DNA of 64,000 nucleotides from positions 1 to 64,000 of the forward strand of contig JAADVB010000010.1 of NCBI GenBank assembly GCA_023334545.1, written 5' to 3'. This document shows positions 21,305 through 30,617 of the stretch, piece after piece. Source of the stretch: Salisapilia sapeloensis CBS 127946 (Eukaryota > Protista > Oomycota). The notes beneath the pieces were generated by a model. The model had not been told where the DNA came from. It made no database searches and was given only the letters and a program-made list of their open reading frames with translations. The position numbers and the translations under genes are program-made. Within the stretch, counting starts at the first letter, position 1, and each line of letters starts with the position of its first letter.

Positions 21305-22936
21305 ATGGGGAACTCACCAAGCTCACGAAGTAAAGCACGCCGCAGCAGCAGCGCTCGTGCACGCCCAACGCAAGTTCCTATCGGCCACACGGGGGGAACG
21401 CAGCAGCAGCAGCCTCCTGCAAGCTTTAGCCCAATACCGGATGAATTTCGATCATTAAATGAAGTGACTGCAGGTATCTGCTATCGATTTCGCTGCTGAC
21501 TCGCACACTCTAACGCTTGCAACTTGTAGCTCTCCGTCGCCACGGACTCGAAAGCAGCAACCTCATCCTCGGCATTGACTGTGAGTCCACTACTGCCCAT
21601 CATGTCTTCTTCATTTTGTCACTTTTTTATACATAGTCACCAAGTCCAACGAGTGGAGTGGCAAGAGCACTTTCAATGGGCGCAATCTCCATTGCACTGC
21701 CGACCCCAATGTGCTGAACCCATACGAAGAGGTGATCGAGAGTATTGGCAAAACGCTTCAAGACTTTGGTACGTCCGCAAAGACTTTTTGATGCTGTATC
21801 CATTCTAACTATAGTCGAACGTAGATGATGATAATATCGTCCCTATCTACGGCTTTGGCGATGAGATGACGAGCGATCACTCGGTCTTTACCTTTGCAGA
21901 GCATGGTGAGCCCGGATTTCCGTTCGAACAAATACGATCTCGATACCGACAAGTAGTTCAAAATGTCAACATGGCCGGCCCAACATCCTTTGCTCCCCTC
22001 ATCCACGAAGCTATTAATGTGGTGAAGCGCACAGGCGAATATCACATCCTGGTCATCGTCGCAGATGGCCAAGTCACACGGTCCGTGGATGTCCCACCGC
22101 ATGCAGTGTCTAAGAACGAAAAGGAGACGATCGATGCCATCACACTGGCGAGCCATTTCCCACTGAGTATTGTCATGGTCGGCGTCGGGGACGGACCATG
22201 GGAGTCCATGATCTACTTTGACAACTACCTCGTCCACCGCCAATTCGATAACTTCCAATTCGTCCAGTTCCATGAAATCGCATCTCCTTACTCTAACTAC
22301 AGCGTTCGAGAAACCCAATTTGCTCTGCATGCGCTCATGGAGATTCCGCAACAGTATGCCTGCATCAAGAAATTGAATCTGCTTGGTGGACGCTACCCAT
22401 ACCATGTCCTCAACCGTGTCCCTCAGGTTATGGTCTACCCAACGCCTCAGCCTCCAGTTCCTTCGGAGAACTCGTTTGCTCACGGCGTCTACCAACCCGC
22501 TATTCAACGGCACAACACAGAACCCTTCTCAAACGAACACACTTCGTATGAACCTCCTACGCACATGCCCAGTGCCGTGCCTCACAACCTTGCTAGTGCC
22601 CACGACGGCACTCTCCACACCTCATCCTACCAGCCTTCAACCAATCTATCTGCGTCACTTTCAAATCACAATACAAACGCTTGGGCATCTCACTCCAACT
22701 CTGCGTCTGCTCCTGCGATGATGTCGTCCCATCCAAGAGGACTTGCTTCACAAGCTTCTGCCGAGCTGGAGCTGTCCAGACTACAAGAGGAGATGCTGTG
22801 TGCCATCTGCGAAGATCGGAAGAAAGACACCGTGTTCCAATGTGGCCACGAGACATGTCATGCGTGTGCCCAATACCTGTCCCAGTGTCCAAATTGTCGA
22901 CAGGAGATCCAGGTACGGATCAAGCGGTATAGTTGA
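21305..22936 (+). CDS. RGLG: RGLG-type E3 ligase (N-myristoyl site, copine/vWA domain, C-terminal RING), about 4 exons
   Basis: Starts MGNSPSS. Spliced GLESSNLILGIDFTKSNEW, GPTSFAPLI, SIVMVGVGDGPW and FDNFQFV. RING: CAICEDRKKDTVFQCGHETCHAC...CPNCR. Confidence 0.9.
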
Positions 22937-23194: not shown

Positions 23195-24172
23195 CTACGC
23201 CTCTTTCTTTGCGCCATGGCGAATGCATTTTCCCTGACGCACTGCTCCTTTCGTGCATCCGTCCACTTGACAGCGCTTTCCGCCACCATGACCGGTACAA
23301 AATGTGCCTCCGACGGCACTCTTCGTGCATCCGTTCTTTTGACAGCGCTTGCCTCCGCCGTGTCCGATGCAGAGGCCGCCTTGGAGAGCCGTCTTGGTGC
23401 ACTCTGGCTTGCTGCACTTGCGCCCGCCCCCATGGGCGGAGCAGAAACCGCCAACCAGTGCCGACTTGGTGCATTCTGGTACTTGACAGCGCTTGCCGCC
23501 GCCGTGTGCGATGCAGTATCCTCCTTGCTTGGCGCTCTTGATGCATTCTTCGACGGCGCATCGCTTGCCTCCGCCATGGGAAATGCAGTATCCGCCCGTC
23601 TTGGCGCTCTTGGTACAGCCAGGTGACCGGCAGAAACGACTCTGTTTGTGGTATTTGCAAAAAGACCCAGCCGCACCTCGGACGAGTCGGTCGCAATCTT
23701 CCCTTGCACATACGTTGTTCAATAGTTTGGACATACTGTCATGCTGACGCACACGCGGCTCGGCTGCCGGTTTCACAATAGGCGACGATGCCTCTGTCTT
23801 TATCTCCACTTCATCCGCCTGTGGTGTCGTTAGTGTTGGATTGTCCACGATGAAGCTGAGGCTCATAGCCGACGTCGTTCTTCTAGACGTCGTTGATGTG
23901 TTCATGTTGGTTGAGTCGTGGTTTTCATCCGAGTGGGATGGTGATGCTTGGCCCTGGTTGAAGGACATGGCGCGCAGTGGTCGTAATAGCGACTCTGTCT
24001 GGCAGCTGGAGTTAAGTGTGTATGGGTTGGTAATCTTGCCCTCGAGTCGAGGATGACACGAGATGGATGAGAGGAAGACGCCTTGGCTGGGCGAAGGCGG
24101 AGAGCTATATCTGCTGGCGAACGTGTTTGGACGGCCGAAGTCGAGTTCTTGTGGAAATGGTTGCCAGGACAT
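23195..24172 (-). CDS. WRKY19-like Cys/His-repeat protein
   Basis: Six tandem C...GCTKSA..GG.C..HGGGKRC repeats after a low-complexity N-terminus containing MSLSFIV. Confidence 0.85.
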   Translation of the reverse strand: MSWQPFPQELDFGRPNTFASRYSSPPSPSQGVFLSSISCHPRLEGKITNPYTLNSSCQTESLLRPLRAMSFNQGQASPSHSDENHDSTNMNTSTTSRRTTSAMSLSFIVDNPTLTTPQADEVEIKTEASSPIVKPAAEPRVRQHDSMSKLLNNVCAREDCDRLVRGAAGSFCKYHKQSRFCRSPGCTKSAKTGGYCISHGGGKRCAVEECIKSAKQGGYCIAHGGGKRCQVPECTKSALVGGFCSAHGGGRKCSKPECTKTALQGGLCIGHGGGKRCQKNGCTKSAVGGTFCTGHGGGKRCQVDGCTKGAVRQGKCIRHGAKKEA

Positions 24173-26861
24173 GAGTTGCTGCTACGTGAGTTGGAACGTA
24201 GCAGTCGACAGAGTACGAGTAGAGTGTTGATCCAAATTAATCAGACTTGAAGGCGCTGTTGCTGATGTCTGGATATAAACTGTGGTGCTTGGATGTGGCA
24301 GATGCAGTTGGTTGATACGGTGAATTGGTCCGTTGGTTTAAGTACGTGTCACGCGTAGCAATGCACTCGCAACAAGCGTAAAGGTCACGAGATAGTCGAT
24401 GGTCTCGGACGCTAGAGTGAAGTATCCTCTCGGTTGAGAGAGATGTTCGATCCTAGTGGAAAGAATTGGAATGAGCGGAAGAAACTCAATGCCGATGGCT
24501 TTGTCGGCGCCACGACCCCGACAACAGCTGTGAGCAACACCCTTACGTAACTTGTAGCCACTGGAAAAGCTCAACGTCGTCTCAACGCGAAGTGGGGAGA
24601 TCTTGGGACACTATGGTCGAAAAGAGCATCTTCTGCGAAGCAGAATTAGCTCACCGCAATATCCAAGTAGTTGACGAGAACTATCGCGGCTAGCGCATCA
24701 TCTGATAATCTGACCGAAGCAAGAGTAATGACGATTGAGCACAGAGTTACTTTTGGTCCGATCTGTCGCTTCAGTTGCTGTCAACTAGAGTCAGCGGGTG
24801 AAACGAGTCAATCCCGGCGGAAGATTCTAAATGTCACGAAGGAAAAGCTTCAGATGATCGCTGGATTGAAATTGCTACATCGCGTTGAATTTGAGTGTCC
24901 ACAAGGTCAGATCGATGATTTTTAAATTTTCATTGATGTGGGAGCGATGCGCACCCGCGCTTCCGACGAAGCGTGGTAATGTATCGATATTACGAAGATA
25001 ACGCACAAGCGCGACCTACTACAGCAGCTTCAGCGCTTCAATAAAAGTGCTTTAACACTCGATCATCAGAAGGATTGCCGCGTGGGACGGTTTACCTAAA
25101 ACTTATTGTGTGTTCGTATGGCAGGATATCTCGGGGGTCGAATACTCGTCAAATTGCAGCGCATCCTGCAGAAATGTCTACGCGAATGAAACGCGCGTTT
25201 GAAGTATCCACACTCGGTTTCGGAATCGTAACGGGAAATCTGACTAAGGGACAGCTCAAGTATCCACTTGGGCTCTCGAATGATATGAGTGTGCTCGCAT
25301 GCAGGCATTAGTGGCAGCGTCCAAACGGCACAACTGTGGCTGCTGCGACAATGCTCTCTCCAACTTGCCACTCGTTCCTGCAGGCGCGATAGGACTGTGT
25401 TCCCTCGCTGTAAGTGCTGCTAGATATCCGTATCTCTTCTCTATCTATTACAAGACATTCCCTATCTGAGTCGACATCAAAGTGTCAAGATGCGACCAAG
25501 TCGTGCCTGCATAGTCGTAAAGTTTACGTATCATCACGACGTGGCTAGAGCGGAAGACGCTACAAACTGTTGTCGTTGACACTGCCTTGGTTCATGCTGA
25601 CACCTACTGAGTTGGACTTGAAGGTGCTCGATGATATCGTCGAGCTAGTCATTCAAGGGGTTTGCGACACATGATTTGGCACAAACAGCTTCTTACTCCC
25701 CTCCTCCTTTCACTTCGTTACTCGAGCCAAATGGAGCGAAGTCATGGGTGTAGCTCCTGCCGAAAGATTGAAGTGCACGTCGTAGTTGGAGCGTTCGTTC
25801 TCTACGCCCAGCGACAAGATCGAAACTAAATGCCGCGTACTGTATATTGTTCTTGCCACCTACTTCTTTGGATGCACGCTCCGATGCTTTGCTGAAACCG
25901 GCGTCGACTGAACACTCGATCGATCGTAAAAGCCACAAGTCCTGCAACAAACACTTTGGCAGCAAAGCACGTAATGCCAACAAAAGGATGTGGAGATAGG
26001 GTTGGAAGACTTAATGGCTGACATATAACTCATCAAGACGTTAGCTGATACTATCGCGAAATTCAGTGCCACTGGTTGTGCTCCGGATGAATCGTAGAAG
26101 AAATGCGCACTGGACGCACCGAGCACAGCGCAAGTCTAGCCAAAGCTGTCGTCAGCAATTTCGGAACACATTGCGAAAGGTGATAAAGAGGCTTTTGCAA
26201 TTGAAACCAAGTCGACTTTCTTTGGCGAGGACCCAGCGAGTTCCAGGAATGATCAACGGTTGTACATTTGAAGTGGAAATGGCGAAAAGTTGGGTGATCG
26301 ACCATCCAACGTCGCAGCATACGACATGTTTGCTTCTTCGAGCTCTAGCCCCGACGAGTCAGTACGCCTTTCCTTCCAAAGGAGACTATTTTTAGTTGTT
26401 TTGAAAGGAAGCGAGGTGAGATGCTACGCGACGGGTAAGATAAAATGTATGTATCTATACTTGCTGCGGGATGTAGTCGTCGTTGTACTAAAAATCGCAG
26501 CTACAAAGCCTGCATTCGAGCTACAATCCCGAAAGAAAATGCGTCTGGTGTTTAAGACGGCATGTATCCTCCTATCACATCGCTCCTCTCCAACAGGTCA
26601 TGCCTGTAGCTCCGCCAAAAGTACTCTCGTCATAACTGTGTATCAAGTACCTGCCGCCAGTGATCAAGTGCACCTCCGTCGCGGACCAAAGTGCCTTGCT
26701 ATCGCCCCATCCTGTCCAACGTTCCTCGACACCGGCATTTAGCAGTTCGCGCATCTTCGCCGAGATTACCACTTGGGTTGTATCCGTTCTAACTGCTATC
26801 CTGTTACGAACACCTGATCTCGGATTGCCAAAACCACATTGAGCCTTTTTCTGCGGACGAT

Positions 26862-29678
26862 ATGCTACGTCGGTCTCTATTGCCGCTGCGCACGCGCTCG
26901 CTCGCCGGATCTCGGTCCATCCACGCCAGCCGAACCAACATGGCTCGCATCCTCTGCAGCGACCCCATCGACGTCTCTGGCCCGGAGCTCCTTCGCGCCG
27001 CTGGACACCAGGTCACGACTTCGGACGCGTCGCTCTCGCCGTCCGCTCTGCGTGAAGCGATCCCAGACTACGATGTCTTGCTAGTCCAGTCTGCCACCAA
27101 GGTCGACTCGGAGCTCTTGGCTGCTTCTCAGGGCAGACTGCAGCTCATCGGGTCTGCAGGCGCCAGAACCGCCAACATCGACTTGCTGTCCGCCGCTCGT
27201 GCAGGCGCACTGGTTGTCAACTCTCCCTTTGGCAGCACGGCCGTTTCAGCCGATGCAGCCATCGGATTGCTGTCTAAGGTCTCTGGTAAGTCGAACGTGG
27301 CATTCGACCAGCAATTCCAAGGTCAAACGCTTGGCATCGTCGGACTCGGACGTGTCGGACGTGAAGTCGCTCGTAAATGCAGTGCTCTGGGCATGAAGGT
27401 TGTAGCGTGCGATCCTGTGATGCCGTCGTCGAGCAGCAGTCCGCATGCAGAGTCCGTTTCCTTTGACGATCTCGTGCAGCAGAGCGACTTCATCTCCCTC
27501 CACACTCCAGTGAACGCCTTGACCCGTCACCTGGTCTCGAAGGACGCTCTTGCTAAGTGCAAGCAAGGCGTAAAGATCGTAAACAATAGTCGCTCTGCCT
27601 TGGTCGATCTCAATGCGCTGGCGGAGTCGATGGAGAAAGGAGTCGTGGGTGGCGCTGCTTTCGCCAAGCCTCCGCAAGACACGACTGCCGCCTGGAAGTC
27701 TCTTTTAGGTCGTGAAGACTTCTTCGTGAGTCCCACCTCTACGATCGACGAGAAGATTTCGACAGATTTGGCTTCGAAAGTCGACTCGGCTCTTTCTGGT
27801 GATCGACTCTCCGGTGTCATCAACGCTCCGAATCTAGATCTCTCCCGTCGTCAGGAGCTGGATCCTTTCCTGTCGCTAGCGCAGAGACTGGGAAGTCTTC
27901 AAGGCCAGCTCATCGACCAACCGTTGAAGCGAGTGGTAGTCGAGAGCAAGGGTCGTGAGCTCACGTCCTCTGAGATGTCCGGTCAGGTGGTAGATGGAGT
28001 CCTCAAGGGACTGCTGACGCACTTGCTGGATGAAGAGGTCGACATCTCGAACGCATGGGAAGTCGCGGATGATCTAGGCGTCGAGTGCGTCGACCACAAG
28101 CACGAAGTGGACTCTGCCAACGTCTTGAGCGTGACGCTGGTGAGTCAGGATGGAACGTCTCGCAAGGTCTCCGGCACTGTCGTCGGCGACAAGCAGCCAA
28201 AGTTGATGAGCATTAACGATCTCCAGATGGACGCTCTGCCAAGCGGAGCCATGCTCTTCTTCAATAACCAGGATGTGCCAGGTGTCCTCCACAGTGTCAC
28301 GACCGTACTGGCAAAACACCACGTCAACATCGGTCGCTTCGGTCTGGCAAAAGAACCCAACTCTTCCTCCGCCACCAGTCTACTCAACGTCGATGACATC
28401 ATCCCAGACGCTGCGTTGCGAGAGCTCGAGACGCTGGACACGGTGCACAACTTGCGTCGAGTCTCTCTCCTAGAGTTCAATACGCAAAATACCGGCAACC
28501 TGCTGCAGCTGAACTCGCACCGCCAGGCTTCTCGTCATGAAAAACCGTCTGTAAGACCGTCGTCGCCTTTCTTTGGCTCTGGTCCGTGCAAGAAGAGACC
28601 TGGATACTCCCTCTCGAAGCTCTCCTCTCGTTCCCTCGGTCGTTCCCACCGATCCGTTCTAGGTAAGGGCATGCTGGAAGACGCCATCGAGCGCACGAAG
28701 AAGATCCTCCGTCTCCCGTCCGACTACCACTTGGGCATCGTTCCTGCGTCAGACACTGGAGCCTTCGAGATGGCCATGTGGAACCTCCTCGGCCCTCGAC
28801 CGGTGGACATTTGCTACTGGGAGACCTTTGGCCAGCAGTGGTTCAAGGACGCCACGCAAGAGCTTCATCTAGAGAACATCAAGGAGGTCAGCGCTCCCTT
28901 TGGCAAGCTGCCAGACCTCTCTCAAGTGAACTTTGACCACGATGTCCTGCTCACGTGGAACGGGACGACGAGTGGCGTGAAGATCCCGAACGGAGACTGG
29001 ATCCCAGATGACCACCAAGGTCTGATCTTTAACGACGCGACGTCGGCTGCCTTTGCCATGGACATTCCGTGGCACAAGATGGACGTCGGCACCTTTAGTT
29101 GGCAAAAGGTCTTGGGCGGAGAAGGAGCGCACGGCATGCTCATGCTGTCTCCTCGTGCAGTCGAACGCCTCGAGAGCTTCAAGCCAGAGAACCGACCGAT
29201 GCCAAAGATCATGCGCTTTTCTAACGCTTCGACTGGGAAGCTGTCCAAGGGCATCTTTGAAGGCAGCACCATCAACACTCCGTCCATGCTGTGCGTCGAG
29301 GACTACTTGGATGCGCTCACGTGGTCGGAAGACATTGGCGGCCTCGACGCTCTCATCGCCCGATCCGAAACGAACTTGAAGGTCGTGGAGGACTTTGTCC
29401 AGGAGAACTCGAGCTGGATCAAGTTCCTCGCCGAGAGCAAGGACGTTCGGTCCAACACGTCCGTCTGCCTCCTGCTGGAAGACGTCAGCAAGGAACAGGT
29501 CAAGCAGATGACTGCTTTGCTAGCCCATGAAGGCGTGGCCTTTGACATTAACTCGTACAGAGATGCTCCGCCAGGCATCCGCATCTGGTGTGGCGCGACC
29601 GTTGAAGCAGAGGACCTGCAGGCGCTGCTGCCGTGGATCAAGTGGGCGTATGCCAAAATCAAGGCACAGGGCGCATAA
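26862..29678 (+). CDS. serA-serC: Fusion of a D-3-phosphoglycerate dehydrogenase-like region (with ASB and ACT domains) to phosphoserine aminotransferase; mitochondrial-type presequence
   Basis: Arg/Ser/Leu-rich N-terminus, then ILCSDPI, GIVGLGRVG and DFISLHTP, the ACT motif NQDVPG, and a SerC half with FGSGPCKKRPG, LGRSHRS, NDATSAAF and the PLP lysine in TFSWQKVLGGEG. Confidence 0.92.
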   Translation: MLRRSLLPLRTRSLAGSRSIHASRTNMARILCSDPIDVSGPELLRAAGHQVTTSDASLSPSALREAIPDYDVLLVQSATKVDSELLAASQGRLQLIGSAGARTANIDLLSAARAGALVVNSPFGSTAVSADAAIGLLSKVSGKSNVAFDQQFQGQTLGIVGLGRVGREVARKCSALGMKVVACDPVMPSSSSSPHAESVSFDDLVQQSDFISLHTPVNALTRHLVSKDALAKCKQGVKIVNNSRSALVDLNALAESMEKGVVGGAAFAKPPQDTTAAWKSLLGREDFFVSPTSTIDEKISTDLASKVDSALSGDRLSGVINAPNLDLSRRQELDPFLSLAQRLGSLQGQLIDQPLKRVVVESKGRELTSSEMSGQVVDGVLKGLLTHLLDEEVDISNAWEVADDLGVECVDHKHEVDSANVLSVTLVSQDGTSRKVSGTVVGDKQPKLMSINDLQMDALPSGAMLFFNNQDVPGVLHSVTTVLAKHHVNIGRFGLAKEPNSSSATSLLNVDDIIPDAALRELETLDTVHNLRRVSLLEFNTQNTGNLLQLNSHRQASRHEKPSVRPSSPFFGSGPCKKRPGYSLSKLSSRSLGRSHRSVLGKGMLEDAIERTKKILRLPSDYHLGIVPASDTGAFEMAMWNLLGPRPVDICYWETFGQQWFKDATQELHLENIKEVSAPFGKLPDLSQVNFDHDVLLTWNGTTSGVKIPNGDWIPDDHQGLIFNDATSAAFAMDIPWHKMDVGTFSWQKVLGGEGAHGMLMLSPRAVERLESFKPENRPMPKIMRFSNASTGKLSKGIFEGSTINTPSMLCVEDYLDALTWSEDIGGLDALIARSETNLKVVEDFVQENSSWIKFLAESKDVRSNTSVCLLLEDVSKEQVKQMTALLAHEGVAFDINSYRDAPPGIRIWCGATVEAEDLQALLPWIKWAYAKIKAQGA

Positions 29679-29881
29679 ATTTCTGTCTTCCTTTGACGCA
29701 GCAGTTTCTCCTTGATCTAGCCTACGAATATAGGAATATACAATCGAGCAGCACCTCCTGCCTTCCACATGCACTTGCCTCTCTCTAGTCTTGGCATCGT
29801 ATCCCCATTAATGGTACTCTGCAGGTACGATGCGCATTTAACAAACACGAAGACGCAGTATCGCAACTCCACGCTGCTAGG

Positions 29882-30617
29882 ATGGTAGATATCCCCCAGC
29901 CTTCCTCCGACGTCCTTCCAACTGGCTAAATAACAACATAATGAATAGATTGAGACTGTGCTTCTCATGAGCCGGCAAGGCAAAACGCGCCTTTCGAGAT
30001 GGTATGAGAGCGCCACGCCGCCGCTCAAGGAGCGGACGCGAATCATCCGGGAAATCACGTCCCTCGTGCTCTCTCGTCCGAGCAAACAGTGCAATTTTAT
30101 CGAGTTTAAGGAAAAGAAAATCGTGTACAAGCGGTGGGTCTACTAAGCCTTATAACATGCACGACAAACTCATCGTATTCGTGTCAAACAATAGGTACGC
30201 CAGTCTCTACTTCATCGCAGTCATCTCCAAGGACGACAACGAGCTCGTCACGCTCGAGACAATTCACATGTTCGTTGAAGTCTTGGACCGCTACTTTGGA
30301 AACGTACTTAAATTGGCTCTGTATATACCCAAAGCACTCCTTCACACACTTCCTATCTTTAGGTCTGCGAGCTGGACATCATCTTCAACTTCCACAAGGT
30401 GTGTCATTCCTTCCACAGTGATAGTCAACCAAAATATTAATCTTACTGCTTCATGGCGTCCTCGTAGGCATACTACATCCTGGACGAAGTCATCGTCGGA
30501 GGCTACCAGCTTGAATCAAGTAAGAAAGAAGTGCTCCGGGTCTGCTCTCAGCAAGAGGACTACATGGACGAGTCAAAGGAAGAGGGATTCTCTCGCTCTC
30601 GAACGCGTTCTCGCTAA
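29882..30617 (+). CDS. AP1S: Clathrin adaptor small (sigma) subunit, AP-1 type, 5 exons
   Basis: Spliced [24 protein letters not shown] and [18 protein letters not shown]. The first coding exon is inferred to be ATG alone (29882-29884), followed by intron 29885-29948. Confidence 0.88.

What the first reader, a model, noticed from the sequence alone, without database searches (positions are those of the whole stretch)
26940..27840. The PGDH half of the serine-pathway fusion looks catalytically dead (pseudoenzyme or sensor)
Seen: an uninterrupted reading frame in which canonical PGDH motifs are replaced. RAGVGxDN becomes SAGARTAN (substrate Arg lost). N...AEH becomes T...ADA, with a deletion before the Rossmann fold. 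LDVFxxEP becomes AAFAKPP (Asp and catalytic Glu lost). TPHLGAST becomes SPTSTI (catalytic His lost, and no Lys substitute as in type IIIK enzymes). The NAD-binding GLGRVG...CDP, the ASB domain and the ACT motif NQDVPG...VNI are retained, and the fused PSAT keeps its PLP lysine. Known: PGDH needs the His-Glu pair and Arg residues, and its ACT domain binds serine. Inference: the dead dehydrogenase may act as a serine or NAD(H) sensor, or a scaffold that regulates PSAT or docks a separate active PGDH.
Basis: partly seen in the sequence, partly recalled or inferred. Interest (0 to 1): 0.75.

Follow-up and report, generated by a model that had tools for sequence, protein, structure and literature searches.

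The report
Dead dehydrogenase half in PGDH-PSAT fusion
In this oomycete's two-enzyme serine-pathway protein, the first enzyme half has lost its catalytic residues yet is expressed and kept under purifying selection, as also in the white-rust parasite Albugo, so it is probably retained as a non-catalytic structural or regulatory module.

Summary
ORF 26862-29678 (+, 938 aa) is a mitochondrial-type PGDH-PSAT fusion. Its PSAT half is intact: serC_2 scores 556 bits (cut-off 448) and the PLP lysine K749 is present.

Its PGDH catalytic half has lost:
- the proton-donor His, removed by a 5-residue deletion;
- two of the three substrate-binding Arg (Q76, and the deleted Arg134' loop);
- the GRAG Arg, the GN Asn and the nicotinamide-side Asp.

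It scores 335 bits on TIGR01327 (cut-off 454).

- About 85 other fusions from ochrophytes, Saprolegniales, Pythium and Phytophthora keep the His and the Arg residues.
- Albugo candida and A. laibachii carry a similarly dead half, sharing several identical replacements with the window.
- Every oomycete fusion already lacks the Glu and the Arg134' loop.
- The Rossmann core, ASB and ACT signature residues are retained.
- The gene is an unspliced mRNA in independent RNA assemblies.
- A relative 4.4% diverged has no indels, and dN/dS is 0.12 across the dead region.
- Between the two Albugo species, ASB-ACT (94% identical) is better conserved than PSAT (88%).

So this is a selected pseudoenzyme module, not a decaying relic. 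What it does is inferred, not shown. I could not test whether a stand-alone active PGDH exists in this genome. The scan had noted this fusion before (s1-296913), but not the dead half.

The parts
26840..29768 (+). mRNA extent of the fusion gene (unspliced)
   Evidence: the run X3 contig covers 26840-29768 with 0 differences and 0 gaps. There is no depth in the intergenic bin 29856-29982. The runs are RNA-derived, because an upstream contig lacks a 75-nt GT-AG intron.
26862..29678 (+). CDS of the 938-aa PGDH-PSAT fusion, stop codon included
26862..26939 (+). N-terminal Arg/Ser/Leu-rich extension (aa 1-26), a presumed mitochondrial presequence
   Evidence: It aligns with the MLRR... N-termini of Phytophthora and Pythium orthologues. 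The P. infestans serine-pathway enzymes, including this fusion, are predicted mitochondrial, and two of them were confirmed with fluorescent tags (PMC5715807). No targeting predictor was run here.
26940..27836 (+). Degenerate PGDH catalytic unit (substrate-binding plus NAD-binding domains, aa 27-325)
   Evidence: Identity to orthologues is 44-58% here against 75% in PSAT.
27087..27089 (+). Q76 in place of the phosphate-binding 'VRS' Arg (human Arg53)
   Evidence: role of the residue from PMC6300728.
27153..27176 (+). SAGARTAN in place of RAGTGVDN (aa 98-105)
   Evidence: S98 and R102 are shared with Albugo.
27234..27236 (+). S125 in place of the conserved 'GN' Asn
   Evidence: Albugo has the same Ser.
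27297..27317 (+). Shortened loop (aa 146-152) where Trp and Arg134' of canonical PGDH lie
   Evidence: The loop is shortened in all oomycete fusions, and most of all here.
27342..27413 (+). Retained Rossmann signature GLGRVG ... D184
27591..27593 (+). R244, the retained carboxylate-binding Arg (human Arg235)
   Evidence: It is His in Albugo.
27654..27674 (+). AAFAKPP (aa 265-271): the nicotinamide-side Asp is absent and the Glu position is Lys
27729..27746 (+). SPTSTI (aa 290-295): a 5-residue deletion removes the proton-donor His
27837..28226 (+). ASB (PGDH intervening) domain, aa 326-455
   Evidence: PF19304, E = 3e-16.
28227..28481 (+). ACT domain, aa 456-540, with D471 and N489 retained
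   Evidence: These are the counterparts of the M. tuberculosis serine-site residues D463 and N481' (PMC6300728).
28557..29675 (+). Intact SerC_2-type phosphoserine aminotransferase, aa 566-938, with PLP Lys K749 at 29106-29108
   Evidence: TIGR01365 scores 556 bits against a cut-off of 448; the Lys aligns with the M. tuberculosis SerC Lys; 94% of ortholog-invariant columns are kept, and 2 of 110 conserved columns are changed.

Best explanation
The gene encodes the stramenopile mitochondrial PGDH-PSAT fusion. Its PSAT half is a working phosphoserine aminotransferase. Its PGDH catalytic unit can no longer oxidise 3-phosphoglycerate.

The inactivation is old. It predates the split from a relative that is 4.4% diverged, and it is probably shared with Albugo by descent. 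It was followed by renewed purifying selection.

The dead module still has a confidently predicted four-domain PGDH fold, an intact Rossmann dinucleotide-binding core, and intact ASB and ACT signature residues. The most likely role is non-catalytic: it holds the fusion in a PGDH-type oligomer, probably still binds NAD(H) and/or an amino-acid effector, and so organises or regulates the attached PSAT.

The 3-phosphoglycerate dehydrogenase step, if the organism still performs it, would come from a stand-alone paralogue, as exist in Phytophthora.

Shown: loss of residues, intact PSAT, expression, selection, occurrence in Albugo. Inferred: absence of activity, ligand binding, the oligomer or regulatory role, existence of a paralogue.
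For: Residue losses against about 90 fusions and solved PGDHs:
- Only the window and the two Albugo species lack R53, R75, the GN Asn, D259 and H282.

TIGR01327 scores against a cut-off of 454: Ectocarpus 559, Phytophthora 476, Pythium 465, Saprolegnia 444, window 335, Albugo 300-303.

PSAT is intact.

The acceleration is confined to the PGDH half:
- Its branch is 0.71-0.81 against 0.18-0.28 for PSAT.
- Ortholog-invariant columns kept: NBD 58%, ASB 60%, ACT 87%, PSAT 94%.

Expression: RNA-derived contigs end at the gene's borders, both in the source organism and in a relative.

Selection:
- The relative has 127 substitutions and no indel.
- In codons 8-241 there are 29 synonymous and 11 non-synonymous changes, giving dN/dS = 0.12 (Fisher p = 3e-10).
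- A. candida and A. laibachii are 80% identical in the dead catalytic part, 96% in ASB, 92% in ACT and 88% in PSAT.
- The Albugo tip branches of the PGDH half are no longer than those of PSAT.

Constraint map: all conserved columns between aa 158 and 237 (Rossmann core) and nearly all ASB/ACT ones are kept in both dead lineages.

Fold: the AF2 model has pLDDT 89.5, and its best PDB matches are type I PGDH at E = 5e-44.

Paralogue precedent: P. infestans has two stand-alone mitochondrial PGDHs besides the fusion (PMC5715807).
Against: - No enzyme assay exists, so activity through unconventional residues, or on another substrate, is not excluded.
- R244 (the carboxylate Arg) and the whole NAD-binding core are retained, which could serve a residual or altered reaction.
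- dN/dS rests on the first 40 of 129 differences, the only ones the tool listed. I take them as a complete list for 26885-27581 because their density matches the contig totals.
- No codon-level estimate could be made for the ASB, ACT or PSAT parts.
- The AF2 confidence is driven by an alignment of active homologues and does not prove foldability.
- Whether this genome has a stand-alone PGDH could not be checked.
- NAD(H) or serine binding is inferred from motifs only.
Confidence: 0.7

Rival explanations
1. Passive relic. The PGDH half is functionless and stays open only because the targeting peptide lies upstream and the needed PSAT lies downstream in the same frame, so stops and frameshifts are purged but amino-acid changes are free.
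For: - The architecture does impose frame maintenance without any function of the domain itself.
- The half has in-frame deletions and a branch 2.5-4 times longer than PSAT's.
- The few A. candida intraspecific amino-acid differences all lie in the catalytic part.
Against: - dN/dS is 0.12, not about 1, in the dead catalytic region.
- There is no indel in 2,860 nt against the relative.
- Albugo ASB-ACT is 94% identical between species, more than PSAT at 88%.
- The Rossmann, ASB and ACT signature residues are all retained in two long-separated dead lineages.
Confidence: 0.1
2. Still an enzyme. The domain catalyses the PGDH reaction, or a new NAD-dependent reaction on another 2-hydroxyacid, with non-canonical residues.
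For: - The NAD-binding core and the carboxylate-binding R244 are kept.
- Purifying selection is strong.
- Some type III PGDHs use Lys instead of His (PMC6300728).
Against: - The His position is deleted, with no His or Lys at or beside it.
- Both phosphate-binding Arg and the nicotinamide-side Asp are gone.
- Albugo has also lost R235, so the one retained catalytic-site Arg is not conserved across the dead lineages.
Confidence: 0.08
3. The whole phosphorylated serine pathway is decaying in a parasite, and the dead PGDH half is its first visible stage.
For: The only other lineage found with the dead half is Albugo, an obligate biotroph. In the relative's runs the gene lies among about 160 Mb of contigs, which may be mixed host and parasite material.
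Against: - PSAT passes its equivalog cut-off, and only 2 of 110 conserved columns are changed.
- The gene is expressed.
- The downy mildews Peronospora, Hyaloperonospora and Bremia, also obligate biotrophs, keep the His and Arg residues.
- Unverified scan notes report a mitochondrial-type phosphoserine phosphatase in this genome.
Confidence: 0.05
4. Assembly or gene-model artefact.
For: None found.
Against: RNA-derived contigs from a different study match 26840-29768 exactly. A related organism carries the same deletions, with no gaps. The N-terminus and domain order match the orthologues.
Confidence: 0.01

Closest known systems
Stramenopile mitochondrial PGDH-PSAT fusion (P. infestans PITG_00133; Abrahamian et al. 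2017, PMC5715807; Mendoza & Judelson 2026 preprint, 10.64898/2026.07.27.741032)
   Same: - The domain order is the same: presequence, substrate-binding and NAD-binding domains, ASB, ACT, SerC_2-type PSAT.
- It falls inside the Pythium/Phytophthora/Albugo clade in trees of both halves.
- PSAT is 75% identical.
   Different: - The catalytic unit is only 44-58% identical.
- It lacks His282, Arg53, Arg75, the GN Asn and Asp259, all of which Phytophthora, Pythium, Saprolegniales and ochrophytes keep.
- It fails the PGDH equivalog model.
- No phosphoglycerate kinase was seen among the eight neighbouring ORFs scanned, whereas mtPGK is adjacent in P. infestans.
Albugo candida CCI44776.1 / KAL0592464.1 and A. 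laibachii CCA16093.1, which databases name 'phosphoglycerate dehydrogenase' or 'phosphoserine aminotransferase'
   Same: - The PGDH half is dead in the same places.
- Identical replacements are shared at R98S (A. candida), G102R, T112A, N125S and E341Q, and the Asp259 position is deleted in both.
- The Rossmann, ASB and ACT residues are retained.
- TIGR01327 scores are below cut-off at 300-303.
- A Copine+RING gene lies upstream in both.
   Different: - They are only 36% identical to the window in the catalytic part and 71% in PSAT.
- Albugo has Glu at the His position rather than a deletion, His for Arg235, and Asp for Arg53.
- The PSAT half mildly rejects a window+Albugo clade (AU p = 0.023), whereas the PGDH half (99/99) and ASB+ACT alone (94/87) support it.
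Type I D-3-phosphoglycerate dehydrogenase (M. tuberculosis 1YGY/3DC2; human PHGDH)
   Same: The four-domain fold is the same, and these are the best structural and sequence matches. The Rossmann motif and the ACT Asp/Asn are present.
   Different: The window protein lacks the proton donor and two of the three cationic substrate binders, so it is not a functional member of the family.
Pseudoenzyme domains kept inside multidomain metabolic proteins (general class)
   Same: The fold is homologous to an enzyme, the catalytic residues are lost, and the module is expressed and under purifying selection.
   Different: No dead PGDH module was found in the paper library. Its non-catalytic role here is unknown.

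Membership tests
D-3-phosphoglycerate dehydrogenase, type I (TIGR01327 equivalog) | Whole-protein score at or above the curated cut-off (454 bits) | tested here: not met
   335 bits. Controls: Ectocarpus 559, Phytophthora 476, Pythium 465.
D-3-phosphoglycerate dehydrogenase, type I (TIGR01327 equivalog) | Active-site His (or Lys) as proton donor (human His282) | tested here: not met
   a 5-residue deletion at aa 291/292 removes it. No His or Lys lies at or beside the position.
D-3-phosphoglycerate dehydrogenase, type I (TIGR01327 equivalog) | Two phosphate-binding cationic residues (human Arg53 and Arg134') | tested here: not met
   Arg53 is replaced by Q76, and the Arg134' loop is deleted. 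Roles of the residues from PMC6300728.
D-3-phosphoglycerate dehydrogenase, type I (TIGR01327 equivalog) | Carboxylate-binding Arg (human Arg235) | tested here: met
   R244.
D-3-phosphoglycerate dehydrogenase, type I (TIGR01327 equivalog) | Rossmann GxGxxG plus Asp, and the four-domain architecture (SBD, NBD, ASB, ACT) | tested here: met
D-3-phosphoglycerate dehydrogenase, type I (TIGR01327 equivalog) | NAD-dependent oxidation of 3-phosphoglycerate | not testable with these tools
   This needs an enzyme assay or serA complementation.
Phosphoserine aminotransferase, SerC_2 type (TIGR01365 / NF002841) | Score above the curated cut-off, and the PLP-binding Lys | tested here: met
   556 bits (cut-off 448) and 590 bits (cut-off 477). 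K749 aligns with the PLP Lys of M. tuberculosis SerC.
Stramenopile mitochondrial PGDH-PSAT fusion (PMC5715807) | PGDH N-terminal to PSAT in one polypeptide, orthologous to the oomycete fusions | tested here: met
Stramenopile mitochondrial PGDH-PSAT fusion (PMC5715807) | Mitochondrial targeting | not tested
   An Arg/Ser/Leu-rich 26-aa extension aligns with the orthologues' presequences. No predictor or localisation experiment was run.
Pseudoenzyme (catalytically dead homologue under selection) | Catalytic residues lost, yet the gene is expressed and its sequence is under purifying selection | tested here: met
   Absence of activity itself was not measured.

The most novel reading that the evidence does not exclude
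After losing catalysis, the PGDH module of this lineage and of Albugo was re-purposed. It would act as an NAD(H)- and/or amino-acid-sensing allosteric and assembly unit. It would control the fused PSAT, or recruit a stand-alone active PGDH into a mixed tetramer (a mitochondrial 'serinosome'). That would explain why ASB-ACT became the most conserved part of the Albugo protein after a burst of change.
Probability: 0.25. Interest if true: 0.75.

Novelty: new variant of a known kind. Interest (0 to 1): 0.55.

Why it matters
- **Annotation.** Databases and metabolic reconstructions count this protein, and its Albugo counterparts, as a phosphoglycerate dehydrogenase. If the half is dead, the first step of phosphorylated serine synthesis in these parasites depends on another gene or is missing. 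That changes predictions of auxotrophy and pathway direction.
- **Domain evolution.** The fusions form a natural series: canonical in ochrophytes, Glu and Arg134' loop lost in all oomycetes, His and Arg lost in Albugo and this lineage. This series shows how one domain of a bifunctional enzyme turns into a non-catalytic module while its partner stays active.
- **An open question about Phytophthora.** It raises the testable question of whether the fused PGDH domain is active even in Phytophthora. There, knock-out of the fusion has so far been read as a PSAT knock-out (10.64898/2026.07.27.741032).

Tried and rejected
1. **'ASB-ACT-PSAT' proteins of about 640 aa.** These appeared and looked like natural fusions lacking the catalytic unit, which would have shown that ASB-ACT works with PSAT alone. 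Searches show they are gene-calling artefacts. A 304-333-aa 2-Hacid_dh ORF ends 42-73 nt upstream on the same strand, so an intron has split one gene.
2. **Exact-sequence look-ups.** The window protein and the A. laibachii protein are not on record, so no A. laibachii DNA was available and no Albugo dN/dS could be computed. The A. candida cluster members differ at only 2-5 residues.
3. **Earlier scan notes on a stand-alone PGDH in this genome.** None were found. This says nothing about absence.
4. **First protein search, using PGDH-half words.** It missed Albugo and Saprolegniales entirely because their PGDH halves share few words with the window. They appeared only with PSAT-half words.
5. 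**One inactivation event or two?**
   - The PGDH half (99/99) and ASB+ACT alone (94/87) join the window with Albugo, but both are long branches.
   - The PSAT half rejects that clade at p = 0.023.
   - The question is left open.
7. **The large representative-library search** was not used. The word searches had already settled the questions it could answer.
Full report
**What is there**

The window holds one uninterrupted ORF, 26862-29678 on the + strand, of 938 aa.
- Pfam finds 2-Hacid_dh, 2-Hacid_dh_C, PGDH_inter (ASB) and ACT in the first 540 residues.
- NCBIfam finds a SerC_2-type phosphoserine aminotransferase in residues 558-936. It scores 556 bits on TIGR01365 (cut-off 448) and 590 bits on NF002841 (cut-off 477).
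- The PGDH equivalog TIGR01327 scores only 335 bits against a cut-off of 454.
- The 2-Hacid_dh_C match ends at profile position 152 of 178, just before the segment that carries the Asp and Glu.

The gene is the stramenopile PGDH-PSAT fusion described for Phytophthora infestans (PITG_00133; PMC5715807). There it is predicted to be mitochondrial, and two stand-alone PGDH genes exist beside it.

**Check of the observation**

I compared the protein with M. tuberculosis and human PGDH, with 24 and then about 90 fusion orthologues, and with three bacterial type I PGDHs.

| Canonical motif | Window | Residues |
|---|---|---|
| RAGTGVDN | SAGARTAN | aa 98-105 |
| GN | GS | S125 |
| AAE | ADA | D131 |
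| Asp/Glu segment | AAF-AKPP | aa 265-271 |
| TPH(I/L)GA(L/S)T | SP-----T | aa 290-295 |

In the last row a five-residue deletion removes the His, and no His or Lys lies at or next to it.

The 'VRS' Arg is Q76, and the loop that carries Trp and Arg134' is deleted.

[quoted passage not shown] Here only the Arg235 equivalent (R244) survives.

Retained residues are the Rossmann glycines G161/G163/G166, D184, H214, the ACT residues D471 and N489 (counterparts of the M. tuberculosis serine-site residues), and the PSAT PLP lysine K749.

The pattern is not chance. Of 58 catalytic-region columns at least 95% conserved in 86 other sequences, 19 are changed in the window, against 2 of 110 in PSAT (p = 2e-8).

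- The 'AEH' His is Leu in all eukaryote-type fusions and in human PHGDH, so that change is not diagnostic.
- The loss of the Glu and part of the pre-Rossmann deletion occur in every oomycete fusion.

**The sequence is real and expressed**

Contigs of two runs from a study other than the probable DNA source match the window exactly.
- One contig spans 26840-29768, which is the ORF plus 22 nt upstream and 90 nt downstream.
- The next intergenic bin has no depth.
- An upstream contig lacks a 75-nt GT-AG intron (minus strand, 26386-26460), so these assemblies derive from RNA.
- The fusion mRNA is unspliced.

**Comparative picture**

The first protein search drew its words from the PGDH half. It found only Peronosporales and Pythiales fusions, about 50% identical. 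A search with PSAT-half words found about 90 full-length fusions, including Albugo, Saprolegniales and many ochrophytes.

A key-residue table shows three grades:

| Lineage | State of the PGDH half |
|---|---|
| Ochrophyte fusions (Ectocarpus, Tribonema and others) | Fully canonical |
| All oomycete fusions | Lack the Trp/Arg134' loop; Ser, Thr, Pro, Gly or a gap at the Glu position |
| Window protein, Albugo laibachii, A. candida | Additionally lack Arg53, Arg75, the GN Asn, Asp259 and His282 |

The Albugo sequences were named. Albugo also has His for Arg235.

TIGR01327 scores follow the same grades (cut-off 454): Ectocarpus 559, Phytophthora 476, Pythium 465, Saprolegnia 444, window 335, Albugo 300-303.

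**Relation to Albugo**

The window and Albugo change 14 of the same conserved catalytic columns, against 7.2 expected (p = 1.4e-4).
- In seven of these columns the state is the same: R98S, G102R, T112A, N125S, the Asp259 deletion, and two gapped columns of the His loop.
- E341Q in ASB is also shared.

The phylogenetic signal is mixed.
- Trees of the PGDH half (99/99) and of ASB+ACT alone (94/87) join the window with Albugo. Both are long branches.
- The PSAT half places the window in an unresolved clade with Albugo, Pythium and Phytophthora. It mildly rejects window+Albugo (AU p = 0.023).
- A Copine+RING gene lies upstream of the fusion in both.

A single ancestral inactivation is the more economical reading. 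Two parallel events are not excluded.

**Relic or selected module**

Frame maintenance alone proves nothing here. The targeting peptide lies upstream and the needed PSAT lies downstream, so any stop or frameshift would be purged regardless. Three other lines of evidence bear on the question.

1. Divergence from a close relative.
   - The relative differs by 127 substitutions in 2,860 nt, with no indel. It therefore shares the deletions.
   - It shows no difference at codons 76, 98 or 125.
   - The tool listed only the first 40 differences (26885-27581). Their density, 5.7%, equals that of the whole PGDH-half contig (74 in 1,285 nt), so I take the list as complete for that stretch.
   - Of those 40, 29 are synonymous and 11 are not, giving dN/dS = 0.12 (p = 3e-10).
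2. Conservation between the two Albugo species.
   - Identity is 80% in the dead catalytic part, 96% in ASB, 92% in ACT and 88% in PSAT.
   - Their tip branches are as short in the PGDH half as in PSAT, and shortest in ASB+ACT, after a long stem branch.
   - This is a burst of change followed by renewed constraint.
3. The constraint map.
   - Every conserved column between aa 158 and 237 (the Rossmann core) is kept in both dead lineages.
   - Nearly every conserved ASB/ACT column is kept as well.
   - The substrate-binding motifs and the catalytic loop are the parts that changed.

An AF2 model of aa 27-540 is confident (pLDDT 89.5). It matches type I PGDH structures best, at E = 5e-44. That confidence leans on an alignment of active homologues.

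**Mechanism**

The supported reading is a catalytically dead PGDH module kept for a non-catalytic purpose. The retained features point to three things: a PGDH-type oligomer, dinucleotide binding, and possibly amino-acid binding at the ACT site. Together these would organise or regulate the fused PSAT. This part is inference.

The dehydrogenase step would have to come from a stand-alone paralogue, as in Phytophthora. I could not search this genome, and earlier scan notes mention none, which says nothing either way.

**Novelty**

The fusion is known (PMC5715807; 10.64898/2026.07.27.741032). I found no paper on a dead PGDH half in oomycetes or Albugo, or on PGDH pseudoenzymes. UniRef names the A. 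candida protein 'phosphoglycerate dehydrogenase'. This is a new variant of a known kind.

**Limits**

- There is no assay and no residue-level inspection of the model.
- dN/dS covers only the first 240 codons.
- The organism's identity is coded, and its position relative to Albugo is unresolved.
- Read laying was given 3,801 letters.

Noticed in passing
P0001-P0024, P0246-P0275 (oomycete fusions), aligned to window aa 146-152 and 265-271: Every oomycete PGDH-PSAT fusion examined lacks the Trp/Arg134' loop. This includes Phytophthora, Pythium, the downy mildews and Saprolegniales. At the position of the conserved Glu in 'EP' they have Ser, Thr, Pro, Gly or a gap. Ochrophyte fusions keep both features. 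Whether the fused PGDH domain is fully active even in Phytophthora is therefore an open question.
   Followed up: partly
window 25666-26685, minus strand; intron 26386-26460: RNA-derived contigs show a spliced minus-strand transcript in the 2.7-kb stretch upstream of the fusion gene. It has a 75-nt GT-AG intron. Another first-stage note calls this stretch gene-free. No ORF longer than about 105 aa crosses it. It may be a non-coding divergent transcript, or a long 5' leader of the minus-strand zinc-finger gene at 23195-24172.
   Followed up: partly
window 21866-22936 (+) and L001:1208-2498 (-): A Copine + RING (RGLG-like) gene lies upstream of the fusion gene both here and in Albugo candida, but in the opposite relative orientation. 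Between it and the fusion, the window also has a protein with six WRKY19-type zinc fingers (23195-24172, minus strand).
   Followed up: no
L002:4958-8049, L003:3282-6373, L005:3538-6477: In several metagenome and Logan contigs, probably algal, the fusion is called as two genes: a 304-333-aa dehydrogenase and a roughly 650-aa 'ASB-ACT-PSAT'. They are separated by 42-73 nt. This is most likely an intron at the NBD/ASB boundary. It creates a false 'PSAT with ACT domain' architecture in protein databases.
   Followed up: yes
P0241-P0244: Four proteins of 735-755 aa score higher than any fusion against the PSAT half (714-821 bits) at only 45-51% identity. Three have no Pfam annotation and one has Aminotran_5. 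They may be tandem double-PSAT proteins.
   Followed up: no
P0291 (Scytosiphon promiscuus, marked partial): This brown-alga fusion shows Val, Asp and Ala at the Asp259, Glu264 and His282 columns, while all other ochrophytes are canonical. The cause is probably a gene-model or alignment problem. I left it out of the statistics.
   Followed up: no
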